This document shows, one piece after another, positions 3,993 to 10,020 of a stretch of 64,000 nucleotides of DNA. A program made the position numbers and the translations under genes. The notes under the pieces were generated by a model, which had not been told where the DNA came from, made no database searches, and saw only the letters and a program-made list of their open reading frames with translations. Position 1 is the stretch's first letter. Each line of letters begins with the position of its first letter. The DNA is taken from positions 1 to 64,000 of IMG/VR virus record IMGVR_UViG_3300040801_001224. The stretch is one strand, 5' to 3'.

Positions 3993-4259
3993 GTGACGGA
4001 ATCTTTTATAATACACAGTGGCAACATAGAGCTCATTCGAATAGCTGTTCACCGGGTATTGTCTGATTATGCCGTTGATTCCATAAACCTAGATCCAATC
4101 AGTGTCCCCCATCATTATAGTCGCACTCGAGTCACCGTATTGTTTAGTGATGCTGAATGCCACTTAGCTTATCGTATACGTTGGGATGATGCCAGTATAG
4201 CTACCCATACACAGAGTGTTATGTACCGTATGGTGTCTCAGAAGTATAACCTAGATTGA
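3993..4259 (+). CDS. hypothetical protein, family A
   Basis: FSDAECHLAYRIRW; GTG 5 nt after TATAAATA. Confidence 0.65.
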   Translation: MTESFIIHSGNIELIRIAVHRVLSDYAVDSINLDPISVPHHYSRTRVTVLFSDAECHLAYRIRWDDASIATHTQSVMYRMVSQKYNLD

Positions 4260-4358
4260 TTCACCTACCTGGATTAGCCAATCGGATTCACCTAGATGGA
4301 TCGTTCAGTCAGGTCATTTCGCTGGAATGAATCAGATGGATGGGCCAGTCGGTCAGTC

Positions 4359-4388
4359 TATCCTGTGGGATTATCCTGTGGGATTATC
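4359..4388. repeat. 13-bp tandem repeat TATCCTGTGGGAT x2 plus a partial copy
   Basis: Copies at 4359-4371 and 4372-4384, partial at 4385-4388. Confidence 0.8.
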
Positions 4389-4391
4389 TTA

Positions 4392-4420
4392 TTGACAAAA
4401 AAATTTGGTTGTGTTATAAT
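4392..4420 (+). promoter_or_regulatory. sigma70-type promoter, probably leaderless
   Basis: TTGACA-N17-TATAAT; ATG at 4427. Confidence 0.85.
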
Positions 4421-4426
4421 GTCTTT

Positions 4427-4768
4427 ATGGATGATTCAAATAAATTAATTTATGAGATAGATAATTTACAATGGTCGCCGTATGGATCCATACGACCTAT
4501 TGGTCATGATGGCGATTATAATAATAAGCGTTATGTATTCAATGGTGTTCGTCATATTATACGGGAAGTATTTAGTGAGCAAGGTTATGAAGTTGGTGAA
4601 ATCATTATACGGGAAATTGATACGAGTTTTAAGACCCAGTTCATAATATACCTGGAGAGTGCCGAAGACCAGTTTGCTTGGATCATGACAGATACTGATG
4701 TCATTAGTGAAAGAATAGATGATGAAGTCGAATCTTTTCTTGACATGATGGCCCTAAAGAGTATATAA
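4427..4768 (+). CDS. hypothetical protein, family A
   Basis: LESAEDQFAWIMT; the track start at 4340 runs through the promoter. Confidence 0.75.
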   Translation: MDDSNKLIYEIDNLQWSPYGSIRPIGHDGDYNNKRYVFNGVRHIIREVFSEQGYEVGEIIIREIDTSFKTQFIIYLESAEDQFAWIMTDTDVISERIDDEVESFLDMMALKSI

Positions 4769-4775
4769 TATACTT

Positions 4776-4856
4776 GTTCAGTTGTTTTTAAATTGAACTC
4801 CTTTTTTATTGGAACGAATTTTACCCCCAGTGTGAAAATGCCGGGGGTATTTTTTT
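4776..4856 (+). ncRNA. candidate sRNA 1 (hairpin, anti-SD CTCCTT, terminator)
   Basis: TTGACA 4740 / TATAAT 4764; stem GTTCAGTT/AATTGAAC; no ORF; intrinsic terminator. Confidence 0.55.
4822..4856 (+). terminator. intrinsic terminator
   Basis: TACCCCC...GGGGGTA followed by T7. Confidence 0.85.
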
Positions 4857-5011
4857 CAAGGACTTAGGGTCATTACTTATGTAATACTTTCAAGGACTTA
4901 GGCTCGTTGGAAACTCTATTAAAATCAAGGGCTTAGGCTCATCTCTTTCTTCAATGAAATCAAGGGTTTAGGTTCACAGTTACCTCAGAATAAAATCAAG
5001 GGTTTAGGGTC
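4852..5011. repeat. array of five ~20-bp repeats (core TCAAGGRYTTAGGNTC) with unique 14-16 bp spacers
   Basis: Cores start at 4856, 4890, 4925, 4960, 4996; partial inverted copy at 5037-5044. Confidence 0.9.
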
Positions 5012-5151
5012 GGTACCAGGAATGGTTCCTTAAAGTGAGCCTAAGTTGTACCGGTCCGTCGGAGTTCCGGTCTAGATCATTCAGGCAACCGGGGTGTTTG
5101 TCTCGTCCCACCCCCCGGGACCTCCTCAGCGTTATTCCTAACTATACCACT

Positions 5152-5180
5152 ATTATAGCGAATTGGCTGGTCAATGTCAA
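5152..5180 (-). promoter_or_regulatory. reverse-strand sigma70 promoter pointing into the repeat array
   Basis: Minus strand TTGACA-N17-TATAAT followed by AGTGGTATAGTTAGGAA. Confidence 0.85.
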
Positions 5181-5276
5181 GAAAAGATATAAAAAGATAT
5201 GTCTAGATATGCCTGGACCATAATAGTAATTCTGGTTTTCCAATGATAAATAAAAGTACAGGGGGGGATATATAGT

Positions 5277-5450
5277 ATGTTAACTGGTCCGAATGGAGTC
5301 AAGTATAATATTAGATTTGAAGATGAGACCAGTGATGTAATACTGATATTACCCAATCACTCTGGTAAGAATACCGAGTTGAGATTTAACAGTGTCCGTG
5401 ATGTATTGGATTTCATTGGGCAGAAGAGCATAGCACAAAGAACAGCATAA
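5277..5450 (+). CDS. 57-aa hypothetical protein (not in ORF track), paralogue of the next gene
   Basis: MLTGPNGVKY...FNSVRDVLDFIGQKS; GATAAATA at 5245 and G-rich SD. Confidence 0.7.
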   Translation: MLTGPNGVKYNIRFEDETSDVILILPNHSGKNTELRFNSVRDVLDFIGQKSIAQRTA

Positions 5451-5867: not shown

Positions 5868-6302
5868 TCATTTAATAATGAACTTAGGGCGTTTAGATTT
5901 CTCTCCAGGCGCCCGTATGTAATACTTATCGGGACGTTTTCCATATGTTTCGGTAAGCTTAGGACGGTCTTTAACTACAGTATTCTGTATATAGTCTTTA
6001 GATAATAAAACTTTCTCCATTATAACTGAGCCATACTTACCACCGGTCTTTAAGTTATATGTGTCTGGACGCAACACATAGTATTCGTCTACATAATACT
6101 CTTCACGCTCTTCAGCAGTTTCCCGATCAGTAAATACTTCTAGTATACGTTTAATAAAATATGGTCTATCATTGTTATAAGCCCATGTAACAAATGTCCC
6201 GCTACCCATATAGTCATCATTCTCTGGGTCTACTGCTGAGCGGACGCCGATGTATTCCATGTTTGTTTTAGTGTTTATTAGTTTATAAATATAATGTTTC
6301 AT
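5868..6302 (-). CDS. GIY-YIG (Seg-like) homing endonuclease
   Basis: HYIYKLIN...EYIGVR...YMGSG...YNLKTGG; start MKHYIYK. Confidence 0.85.
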   Translation of the reverse strand: MKHYIYKLINTKTNMEYIGVRSAVDPENDDYMGSGTFVTWAYNNDRPYFIKRILEVFTDRETAEEREEYYVDEYYVLRPDTYNLKTGGKYGSVIMEKVLLSKDYIQNTVVKDRPKLTETYGKRPDKYYIRAPGEKSKRPKFIIK

Positions 6303-6380
6303 AATAATACTTATCATATGTACGATCAGTTATGTAGAGTGAACGGTTGACTTCCGGTCTACCATTTGCTATAATGTGTT

Positions 6381-9802: not shown

Positions 9803-9940
9803 ATGAAAGATTATGCAGACAGAAGCTGGACTACTAACGATAAACGTGAGAATTCACAGGGGAGTTGGATAGCTTTTGGTATACTAATGGTGCTCCTGGT
9901 AATCGGTAGTTCCGATATAGTAGAAAGACTGCTGTCCTGA
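9803..9940 (+). CDS. 45-aa single-TM protein
   Basis: SD AGGA; start MKDYADR; hydrophobic C-terminal half. Confidence 0.65.
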   Translation: MKDYADRSWTTNDKRENSQGSWIAFGILMVLLVIGSSDIVERLLS

Positions 9941-10020
9941 GTGAGACAATAAATCACTCTTCCTAACTGTACCCGACCAAGAGTCGGACTTAGCCCGGGT
10001 TAACCCCCGGGCATTTTTTT
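9939..10020 (+). ncRNA. candidate sRNA 2 / 3' UTR antisense to the early-gene RBS leader
   Basis: Unpaired TTCCTAACTGTA (9960-9971) between hairpins GAGTGA/TCACTC and CCGAC/GTCGG, then a terminator. Confidence 0.6.
9993..10020 (+). terminator. intrinsic terminator
   Basis: GCCCGGG-TTAACC-CCCGGGC-A-T7. Confidence 0.9.

What the first reader, a model, noticed from the sequence alone, without database searches (positions are those of the whole stretch)
4740..4856. Second candidate sRNA with the same hairpin / anti-SD / terminator design
Seen: TTGACA-N18-TATAAT (4740-4769) is followed by only ~80 nt before an intrinsic terminator, with no ORF. The RNA has a 5' stem (GTTCAGTT/AATTGAAC), then CTCCTTTTTT (4798-4807), which is complementary to a canonical AAGGAG SD, then the terminator. 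The layout parallels 9939-10020. Inference: a more general anti-SD RNA aimed at host mRNAs or other phage mRNAs.
Basis: partly seen in the sequence, partly recalled or inferred. Interest (0 to 1): 0.6.

Follow-up and report, generated by a model that had tools for sequence, protein, structure and literature searches.

The report
Promoter-driven small RNA in jumbo phage
A conserved, perfect host-type promoter at the end of a small early gene of an uncultured 328-kb phage most likely makes an ~81-base non-coding RNA, but nothing tested supports the idea that this RNA broadly blocks ribosome-binding sites.

Summary
TTGACA-N18-TATAAT (4740-4769), a 5' hairpin (4776-4798), CTCCTTTTTT (4798-4807) and a strong intrinsic terminator (4822-4856) are all there, and no ORF lies between them.

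The window is the start of a 328-kb metagenomic jumbo phage. The genome has 77 perfect sigma-70 promoters where about 0.5 are expected, so this one is very unlikely to be chance.

A second lineage (L006/L056, neighbouring protein 70% identical) keeps both hexamers, the N18 spacing, the first 13 nt of the RNA, the box TTGAACTCCTT and the terminator. The last 13 degenerate codons of the overlapping gene show no synonymous change, against 36% in the rest of the gene. The U-run after the first hairpin is not conserved, so "tandem terminators" is disfavoured.

My reading is a real, separately promoted ~81-nt sRNA nested at a gene's 3' end, the DapZ/MicL type of layout.

The anti-SD function is unsupported. 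There is one 6-nt motif, no significant targets (shuffled RNAs do as well in 91 of 100 trials), no Rfam match and no RNA data.

The RNA is one arm of a conserved cassette: convergent perfect promoters around five phased repeats. That cassette is more unusual than the sRNA itself.

The parts
4740..4769 (+). Promoter P4740: TTGACA (4740-4745), 18-nt spacer, TATAAT (4764-4769). It lies inside the last 10 codons and the stop codon of ORF 4427-4768.
   Evidence: 12/12 match. One of 77 perfect sites against about 0.5 expected. Both hexamers and the spacing are identical in L006 and L056, and the only changes are in the spacer. There are 0 of 13 synonymous changes in the final codons against 21 of 59 upstream.
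4776..4856 (+). Predicted ~81-nt small RNA. The start is inferred at G4776, 7 nt after the -10, and the end lies in the T-run.
   Evidence: In 14 of the 16 leaderless genes of this phage the A of the ATG lies 7 nt after the -10, which calibrates the start site. There is no ORF. Fold z = -3.5 for the window and -5.0 for L006. The covariance model finds only this copy in the genome.
4776..4798 (+). 5'-terminal hairpin: 8-bp stem, 7-nt loop.
   Evidence: -6.0 kcal/mol. In L006 and L056 an 11-nt insertion in the apex adds 6 new pairs while the basal GTTCA/TGAAC pairs are kept. That fits an RNA hairpin better than a fixed-spacing DNA operator.
4793..4803 (+). Conserved box TTGAACTCCTT: the 3' arm of the hairpin plus the anti-SD-like UCCUU.
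   Evidence: Identical in all three sequences, while the next 20 nt differ by a 9-nt indel and several substitutions.
4822..4856 (+). Intrinsic terminator: stem 4822-4849, T7 at 4850-4856. It is shared with the mRNA of ORF 4427-4768.
   Evidence: -15.4 kcal/mol. In L006 a C-to-T change turns an A-C mismatch into A-U, giving a 12-bp stem at -20.9 kcal/mol. On the minus strand no U-run follows the stem (read).
4392..4768 (+). Upstream unit: perfect promoter P4392 (4392-4420) and the leaderless ORF 4427-4768 (113 aa, function unknown). Its mRNA would end at the same terminator.
   Evidence: The ATG lies 7 nt after the -10 in both the window and L006. The homologue P0002 is 70% identical. No Pfam or PHROG hit. 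The structure model has mean pLDDT 52.
4856..5011 (.). Five direct repeats TCAAGGRYTTAGGNTC, starting at 4856, 4890, 4925, 4960 and 4996 (period 34-36 bp). The first begins at the last T of the terminator.
   Evidence: The motif is unique to this locus in the genome. Five copies are kept in L006 and L056. Units 3-5 fit the IHF core WATCAANNNNTTR (sequence reading; consensus from memory).
5037..5078 (.). An inverted part-copy of the repeat (5037-5048) and a 20-nt block identical between lineages (5059-5078), inside a GC-rich island.
   Evidence: Alignments. GC is 61% at 5040-5119 against a 40% genome.
5145..5180 (-). Convergent perfect promoter on the minus strand: -35 at 5180-5175, -10 at 5157-5152, start inferred near 5145.
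   Evidence: 12/12 with N17. It is one of only two minus-strand perfect sites in 328 kb and is kept 12/12 in L006 and L056. The 35-aa frame downstream is not kept in frame in L006 (read). No minus-strand terminator is predicted between it and ORF 4427-4768.

Best explanation
P4740 is a working host sigma-70 promoter embedded in the last codons of a small early gene.

- Transcription starts at about G4776 and stops at the terminator at 4822-4856.
- The product is a stable ~81-nt non-coding RNA: a hairpin at its very 5' end, a 15-24 nt single-stranded linker, and a terminator hairpin with a U-tail.
- In layout this is a 3'-end-nested sRNA with its own promoter that shares the terminator of the upstream mRNA.

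Shown: the sequence elements, their statistical excess and their conservation.

Inferred: that the RNA is made, and its start site.

Most likely mode of action (inferred; my estimate is about 0.3 given that the RNA exists): base pairing through the conserved box UUGAACUCCUU with AAGGAG-type ribosome-binding regions.
- The best internal candidate is the major capsid gene, whose AAGGAGUUCA lies just upstream of the start codon.
- Under this reading an early RNA would damp translation of one or a few messages. It would not act as a global anti-SD sponge.

The RNA is one arm of a conserved cassette: ORF113, the sRNA, five repeats, a GC-rich core and a convergent promoter.
For: Promoter reality:
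- 77 perfect sites against about 0.5 expected. Nearly all precede an ORF start or a tRNA/structured-RNA region.
- N18 sites are used elsewhere in the genome.

Conservation:
- Positions 4700-4800 are the best-conserved stretch (88-94% identity) of the 2.2-kb alignment with L006. Flanking coding DNA is 45-75% identical.
- Both hexamers are intact and all three differences fall in the spacer.
- 0 of 13 synonymous changes in the final codons against 21 of 59 upstream, P about 0.003.

RNA-like features:
- The hairpin begins exactly at the inferred +1.
- The apex insertion in L006 preserves and extends the stem.
- The terminator is kept, with one change that improves pairing.
- There is no ORF.

Cassette behaviour:
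- ORF113 and the non-coding module are present together in two lineages. Both are absent from five complete relatives with 81-84% identical capsid protein.

Precedent:
- The distant cultured relative PA5oct makes two abundant non-coding RNAs from its early region (PMC7318152).
Against: - No RNA data exist for this phage. Only DNA contigs from one microbial-mat study hold it.
- Only two independent lineages are available, so no base-pair covariation could be shown: 0 compensatory pairs.
- The spacer is 18 nt rather than the family's usual 17.
- The conserved nucleotides could serve a DNA-level function or the opposite strand.
- For the pairing mechanism, the capsid gene's initiation region ranks first of 361 only when part of the terminator's 5' arm is included. 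With those bases trimmed it ties at -19.4 kcal/mol, and 91 of 100 shuffled RNAs reach that energy.
- 10-mer complements across the genome were not markedly above a rough uniform-composition expectation (91 found, about 45 expected), and most fall in A/T-rich words.
- The capsid site is shared only with the nearest relative, L124, among 80 relatives.
Confidence: 0.55

Rival explanations
1. Cis-antisense or convergent-transcription device. The minus-strand promoter at 5180 makes a long untranslated RNA with no terminator of its own. This RNA runs through the repeats and then antisense across the sRNA and ORF113. P4740 and its RNA exist mainly to oppose that transcript, by polymerase collision or by forming a perfect RNA duplex. 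The result would be a switch on ORF113 expression or on the state of the repeat region. The CUCCUU motif would be incidental.
For: - Two perfect promoters face each other about 370 bp apart, and both are kept 12/12 in the second lineage.
- P5180 is one of only two minus-strand perfect sites in the genome.
- No conserved ORF lies downstream of it.
- No minus-strand terminator is predicted before ORF113, and the + terminator has no U-run in reverse (sequence).
- In the duplex scan the only strong partner of the sRNA is its own antisense strand.
Against: - There is no evidence that the minus transcript reaches 4856. Its C-rich, G-poor repeat region could trigger Rho termination first (inference).
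- The minus-strand RNA is not unusually structured, z = -0.14.
- This reading does not explain why the sRNA carries a conserved 5' hairpin.
Confidence: 0.2
2. DNA-level element. The five phased repeats plus one inverted copy are binding sites for a protein, either host IHF or a phage factor. Together they form an origin, a packaging or entry signal, or a roadblock. The two flanking promoters supply local transcription or supercoiling, or insulate the site. The ~81-nt RNA is a by-product with no trans function.
For: - The repeats are unique in the genome, abut the terminator and are kept in number and phase in the second lineage.
- Units 3-5 fit the IHF core with an A/T-rich 5' flank, and the 34-36 bp period matches the roughly 35-bp IHF footprint (sequence reading plus general knowledge).
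- The repeat positions R and Y flip even between the close relatives L006 and L056, while the core stays fixed.
- The cassette is gained or lost as a unit.
Against: - No DnaA boxes lie nearby, and GC skew simply follows gene orientation.
- The phage encodes no HU/IHF-family protein.
- ORF113 is acidic and of unknown fold.
- A by-product RNA would not need a conserved 5' hairpin whose stem survives an 11-nt insertion.
- The IHF match was noticed after the fact.
Confidence: 0.15
3. No separate RNA. P4740 is silent or negligible, and 4769-4856 is only the 3' UTR and terminator of ORF 4427-4768.
For: - The segment does serve as that gene's 3' end. P4392 lies upstream and no other terminator is present.
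- The 18-nt spacer is suboptimal.
- In the window lineage the first hairpin is followed by a U-run and could act as a weak first terminator.
Against: - A perfect 12/12 site arising by chance is very unlikely, at about 0.5 expected per genome, and it is kept in a second lineage with synonymous sites frozen.
- The U-run after the first hairpin is not conserved.
- The other three N18 sites sit directly upstream of ORF starts.
Confidence: 0.07
4. The conserved CTCCTT is really AAGGAG on the minus strand. It would be a ribosome-binding site for an antisense ORF overlapping the 3' half of ORF113 and translated from the P5180 transcript.
For: - In L006 and L056 the 11-nt insertion places an ATG 8 nt after AAGGAG and opens a 71-codon antisense frame.
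- The same frame is open for 53 codons in the window, 4746 to 4585 (sequence reading).
Against: - In the window there is no start codon after AAGGAG. The first start, ATG 4746, has only a weak AGGG upstream.
- The product is Ser-rich and low in complexity, as expected for the antisense reading of an acidic protein.
- Open antisense frames of about 50 codons are not rare.
Confidence: 0.03

Closest known systems
3'-end-nested sRNAs with an internal promoter (DapZ of Salmonella, MicL of E. coli; from memory, not tested here)
   Same: The promoter lies inside the end of the upstream coding sequence. The RNA is short and non-coding and shares the mRNA's intrinsic terminator. A U-rich stretch precedes a GC-rich terminator with a long U-tail.
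   Different: No sequence relation. The host is a phage, not a chromosome. Hfq dependence and targets are unknown. Here the RNA starts with a hairpin rather than a free 5' seed.
PA5oct ncRNA001 and ncRNA002 (PMC7318152)
   Same: [quoted passage not shown] Two of them are abundant throughout infection.
   Different: They are 236 and 451 nt long. No homology to this module was found by nhmmer over the first 40 kb of PA5oct. The baseplate protein is only 42% identical.
Betaproteobacteria toxic sRNA, RF02278 (anti-SD sRNA)
   Same: A short terminator-ended RNA with a pyrimidine-rich stretch complementary to SD sequences.
   Different: It scores 13.7 bits against a gathering score of 50. That family carries two long CCUCCUCCC motifs (from memory). 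Here there is one 6-nt CUCCUU partly inside a stem.
Lambda OOP RNA and prophage DicF (from memory)
   Same: Phage-borne RNAs of about 50-80 nt, made from constitutive sigma-70 promoters and ended by intrinsic terminators. DicF blocks a ribosome-binding region.
   Different: OOP is antisense to its neighbouring gene, whereas this RNA is on the same strand as its neighbour. There is no sequence relation to either.
Iteron-type origins and IHF-site arrays (for the adjoining repeats; from memory)
   Same: Several phased direct repeats plus an inverted copy, flanked by promoters. Three units match the IHF core.
   Different: No DnaA boxes and no recognisable initiator gene. Binding has not been tested. 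The repeat is conserved well beyond the IHF core.

Membership tests
Independently transcribed, terminator-ended small RNA gene | Own promoter of the type used by the genome | tested here: met
   12/12 sigma-70 consensus. It is one of 77 against about 0.5 expected, and it is conserved with frozen synonymous sites.
Independently transcribed, terminator-ended small RNA gene | No conserved protein-coding frame | tested here: met
   No + strand ORF of 25 aa or more lies between 4769 and 4856. The mini-frames lack an SD.
Independently transcribed, terminator-ended small RNA gene | Intrinsic terminator within about 50-300 nt of the start | tested here: met
   Stem 4822-4849 plus T7, -15.4 kcal/mol. 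Kept in L006 at -20.9 kcal/mol.
Independently transcribed, terminator-ended small RNA gene | Transcript observed | not testable with these tools
   No RNA run holds the sequence. Only DNA contigs from one mat study do.
3'-end-nested sRNA with internal promoter (DapZ/MicL type) | Promoter inside the upstream coding sequence, with the terminator shared with that mRNA | tested here: met
   The -35 and -10 lie in the last 10 codons and the stop codon of ORF 4427-4768. The only conserved terminator downstream of the stop is 4822-4856.
3'-end-nested sRNA with internal promoter (DapZ/MicL type) | Chaperone-dependent pairing with trans targets through a conserved seed | tested here: inconclusive
   A conserved 11-nt box exists. 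Predicted pairing with the phage's initiation regions is no better than for shuffled RNAs. The host is unknown.
General anti-SD sRNA (RF02278-like) | Match to the family model | tested here: not met
   13.7 bits against a gathering score of 50, E = 9.7.
General anti-SD sRNA (RF02278-like) | Accessible, repeated C/U-rich anti-SD motifs | tested here: not met
   There is one CUCCUU. Its first C is in the stem. UCC has an unpaired probability of 0.06-0.15 in the window RNA and 0.95-0.99 in L006.
Plain 3' UTR with tandem terminators | First hairpin followed by a conserved U-run | tested here: not met
   L006 and L056 read CTCCTTAGAAAC after the hairpin.
PA5oct early ncRNAs | Sequence homology | tested here: not met
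   nhmmer with the module profile against PA5oct 1-40000 gave no hit.
Iteron-type replication origin (adjoining repeats) | Three or more phased direct repeats | tested here: met
   Five copies with a 34-36 bp period, kept in the second lineage.
Iteron-type replication origin (adjoining repeats) | DnaA boxes, an A/T-rich unwinding element and an adjacent initiator gene | tested here: inconclusive
   No DnaA box near the locus. The flank at 5160-5279 is only 33-35% GC. ORF113 has no family and a low-confidence fold.
IHF-site array (adjoining repeats) | Core WATCAANNNNTTR | tested here: met
   Units 3-5 in the window and units 3-5 in L006 fit the core. Units 1-2 have T in place of the A before TCAA. 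Protein binding is not testable here.

The most novel reading that the evidence does not exclude
The 81-nt RNA is one arm of an undescribed phage cassette. Two convergent consensus promoters bracket five phased, IHF-like repeats and a GC-rich conserved core. The short terminated RNA and a long terminator-less antisense RNA would together set the state of a nucleoprotein site, for example replication start, packaging, a DNA-entry stop, or control of the co-inherited gene ORF113.
Probability: 0.15. Interest if true: 0.65.

Novelty: new member of a known kind. Interest (0 to 1): 0.35.

Why it matters
Non-coding RNAs of jumbo phages are barely charted. In the cultured relative PA5oct, two of the most abundant early transcripts are non-coding and of unknown role.

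This locus is a cleanly delimited, testable example in an uncultured relative: a perfect promoter, a defined start and a defined end. It also has rare evidence of selection acting on a promoter hidden inside a coding sequence.

If the pairing idea is right, an early phage RNA would hold back translation of a late structural gene. If the cassette idea is right, the locus would mark a new kind of cis-acting site.

The practical weight is modest. The element is confined to two narrow lineages, and no function has been shown.

Tried and rejected
- **Rfam.** At gathering thresholds over the whole window it found nothing. In E-value mode over 4250-5300 it gave only far-sub-threshold hits.
- **Phage records.** Near and distant DNA searches of 4300-5300 gave no match.
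- **IMG/VR scans.** ORF113, the terminator, a repeat pair, the sRNA 5' block, the 20-nt block and the 362-aa neighbouring protein all returned nothing.
- **Metagenome scan with a repeat pair.** It gave 96 hits, of which only L056 is related. The rest are unrelated tandem repeats.
- **Genome scan.** It gave 16 unrelated hits, for example a 14-bp tandem repeat in L117.
- **Homologues of the 80-aa upstream protein.** Only contigs too short to reach the module were found.
- **Five complete relatives (347-385 kb).** No DNA, protein or covariance-model match. One of them has only 9 perfect promoters, so promoter usage is not shared across the clade.
- **PA5oct ncRNA homology.** None.
- **Target search.**
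  - The genome-wide duplex scan was dominated by terminator G/C pairing.
  - 10-mer complements were not markedly above a rough expectation.
  - The capsid gene's initiation region ranks first only with part of the terminator's 5' arm included, and 91 of 100 shuffles match it once those bases are trimmed. I reject it as evidence and keep it only as a candidate.
- **Anti-SD motifs upstream of terminators genome-wide.** No convincing recurrence. My terminator list includes false sites inside genes.
- **Covariation.** Impossible with three sequences.
- **Read data.** Only identical low-depth DNA contigs are available.
- **ORF113.** The structure model has pLDDT 52, so I ran no fold search. The atlas feature search gave no usable hit.
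- **Origin tests.** GC skew is uninformative. No DnaA boxes lie near the locus. The phage has no HU/IHF gene.
- **Mistyped call.** One search was a mistyped query and returned an error.

Full report
**What the window is**

The window is bases 1-64000 of a 328,096-bp IMG/VR virus record. The record has a 23-bp end overlap, which means a circular assembly, and 40% GC. It comes from microbial-mat metagenomes.

It is a jumbo myovirus.
- Its baseplate wedge protein is 42% identical to that of Pseudomonas phage PA5oct.
- Its gp23-type capsid protein has 80-91% identical relatives on hundreds of metagenome contigs, including genomes of 320-385 kb.

The first 30 kb carry many small + strand ORFs, as in an early region.

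**Checking the observation**

- TTGACA 4740-4745, 18 nt, TATAAT 4764-4769, scored 12/12.
- A hairpin at 4776-4798.
- CTCCTTTTTT at 4798-4807.
- A terminator stem at 4822-4849 followed by seven T at 4850-4856, -15.4 kcal/mol.
- No ORF of 25 aa or more on the + strand in between.
- The -10 hexamer overlaps the stop codon of ORF 4427-4768.
- The RNA folds as hairpin, linker, terminator, with z = -3.5.

**Is the promoter real?**

From base composition I expect about 0.15 perfect TTGACA-N-TATAAT sites per spacer length over both strands of the genome. The genome has 77: 73 with N17 and 4 with N18. Of these, 75 are on the + strand.

What the 77 sites precede:
- 54 precede an SD-led ORF. One of these is the minus-strand P5180, whose 35-aa frame is not conserved.
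- 16 precede a leaderless ORF. In 14 of these the A of the ATG lies 7 nt after the -10.
- 7 precede no ORF. Three of those lead into the tRNA and structured-RNA region.

The other three N18 sites also sit directly upstream of ORF starts. A perfect site in this genome is therefore almost certainly a used promoter.

The leaderless genes calibrate the start site at the seventh base after the -10. For P4740 that is G4776, the first base of the hairpin.

**Comparative evidence**

ORF 4427-4768 has one homologue in the 5.8-billion-protein collection, at 70% identity.
- It lies on contig L006.
- A repeat-pattern scan of metagenomes added L056, a close relative of L006.
- Four further contigs (L002-L005) are identical to the window.

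So there are two independent lineages. Between them the whole 4260-5180 segment aligns.

The best-conserved 100 nt of the 2.2-kb alignment are 4700-4800, at 88-94% identity. Flanking coding DNA is 45-75% identical.
- Both hexamers and the N18 spacing are identical.
- The three differences fall in the spacer, and they change two amino acids.
- Synonymous sites tell the same story: 21 of 59 identical-residue codons differ in the first part of the gene, but 0 of 13 in the last 14 codons. That gives P of about 0.003.

Selection here acts on the nucleotides, not on the protein.

Downstream of the promoter:
- The first 13 nt of the RNA are identical between lineages.
- L006 and L056 carry an 11-nt insertion in the hairpin apex that adds six pairs while the basal pairs are kept.
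- The box TTGAACTCCTT (4793-4803) is identical.
- The rest of the linker differs by a 9-nt indel and several substitutions.
- The terminator is kept, with one change that repairs a mismatch.
- The U-run that follows the first hairpin in the window is absent in L006 and L056. The first hairpin is therefore not a conserved terminator.

**What I conclude about the RNA**

The most economical reading is a separately promoted RNA of about 81 nt that shares the terminator of the upstream mRNA. This is the layout known from DapZ and MicL (from memory). I put about 0.55 on this, including the inferred start.

It remains unproven.
- No RNA run holds the sequence, and the DNA contigs add nothing.
- Three sequences cannot show covariation.

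**The anti-SD idea**

CUCCUU is conserved, and on the + strand it is rarer than its complement AAGGAG (28 sites against 79). The case against a general anti-SD role is stronger.
- The motif is only 6 nt, and its first C is paired in the stem.
- UCC is predicted paired in the window RNA and free in L006.
- No known anti-SD RNA family matches.
- The covariance model finds no second copy in the genome.

Ten-mer complements of the RNA across the genome were not markedly above a rough uniform-composition expectation, 91 found against about 45. Two of them do fall on ribosome-binding regions.
- AAGGAGTTCA lies just upstream of the capsid gene's start.
- AAAAAAGGAG lies before a 78-aa ORF at 288520.

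The capsid site ranks first of 361 initiation regions when part of the terminator's 5' arm is included. With those bases trimmed, it ties at -19.4 kcal/mol, and 91 of 100 shuffled RNAs reach that energy. Among 80 relatives only the nearest, L124, shares that capsid leader.

I keep the capsid gene as a candidate to test, not as evidence.

The claimed twin at 9939-10020 has the same hairpin / single-stranded pyrimidine stretch / terminator layout.
- Its UUCCUAACUG is a 10-nt complement of the early-gene leader CAGTTAGGA(A/G), which occurs 11 times at 7-19 kb.
- It has no promoter of its own and is the 3' UTR of a 45-aa ORF.

**The surroundings change the picture**

The terminator's last T is the first base of five direct repeats, TCAAGGRYTTAGGNTC, with a 34-36 bp period. 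The motif is unique in the genome.

After the repeats come:
- an inverted part-copy (5037-5048);
- a 20-nt block identical between lineages (5059-5078), in a 61% GC island;
- a second perfect promoter on the minus strand (5180 to 5152), pointing back at the sRNA.

That promoter is one of only two minus-strand perfect sites in 328 kb. All of this is kept in L006 and L056.

The minus-strand frame downstream of that promoter is not kept in frame, so its product is non-coding. I found no terminator for it before ORF113. It may therefore run antisense over the sRNA.

Three of the five repeats fit the IHF core consensus with an A/T-rich flank, and the period matches an IHF footprint. I noticed this after the fact, so it is a lead only.

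ORF113 and the module are present together in two lineages. Both are absent from five complete relatives. They behave as one cassette.

This supports two rivals: a convergent-transcription or antisense switch, and a DNA-level protein-binding site for which the RNA is secondary.

**Comparison with what is known, and novelty**

The layout matches 3'-end-nested sRNAs with internal promoters. The sequence matches nothing in Rfam, in phage records or in PA5oct's early non-coding RNAs.

I file it as a new member of a known kind, confined to a narrow phage lineage, with unknown function. The cassette around it is the less ordinary part.

Noticed in passing
window 4856-5180: Five phased direct repeats TCAAGGRYTTAGGNTC (period 34-36 bp) start at the last T of the terminator. 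After them come an inverted part-copy (5037-5048), a 20-nt block identical between lineages (5059-5078), a 61% GC island and a convergent perfect promoter on the minus strand (5180 to 5152) with no conserved ORF. Units 3-5 fit the IHF core WATCAANNNNTTR.
   Followed up: partly
window 9939-10020: This is the 3' UTR of a 45-aa ORF (9805-9941), with a hairpin, the single-stranded stretch UUCCUAACUG and a terminator. The single-stranded stretch is a 10-nt complement (allowing one G-U) of the leader CAGTTAGGA(A/G), which is shared by 11 early genes at 7-19 kb. The element has no promoter of its own.
   Followed up: partly
whole genome; window 2542-29330 for the early set: The genome has 77 perfect TTGACA-N17/18-TATAAT promoters where about 0.5 are expected. 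Many early ones carry a GTGG...CCAC dyad around the -35 and a shared leader ending in CAGTTAGGAG. A complete relative with 84% identical capsid protein has only 9 perfect sites.
   Followed up: partly
window 2542, 4392, 59840 and 13 sites outside the window: Sixteen perfect promoters precede leaderless ORFs; in 14 of them the ATG begins 7 nt after the -10. That is an unusually high share of leaderless messages.
   Followed up: no
window 4260-4390: The non-coding stretch upstream of promoter P4392 is 84-86% identical to L006. It includes a tandem ATCCTGTGGGATT x2 (4360-4386) abutting the -35, present as a single copy in L006. This may be an operator.
   Followed up: no
window 4585-4746 (minus strand); L006 1330-1570: An antisense frame opposite the 3' half of ORF 4427-4768 is open in both lineages, 53 codons in the window. 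In L006 and L056 the hairpin insertion creates AAGGAG-N8-ATG and extends the frame to 71 codons. The product is Ser-rich and probably not a real gene.
   Followed up: partly
window 5868-6317 (minus strand): A GIY-YIG-type homing endonuclease gene (phrog_314, E = 1.5e-27) lies just downstream of the cassette.
   Followed up: no
genome 261544-290925 and 124149-124495 (outside the window): There are 26 tRNA genes, one of them with an 8-nt anticodon loop (266270-266347), and a tmRNA-like gene. Perfect promoters at 261795 and 265799 lead into structured non-coding stretches.
   Followed up: no
genome 80597-81784 (L122): This is a gp23-type major capsid gene. Its leader AAGGAGTTCA is a perfect 10-nt complement of sRNA positions 4794-4803. 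It is shared only with the nearest relative, L124, and it is not statistically significant.
   Followed up: yes
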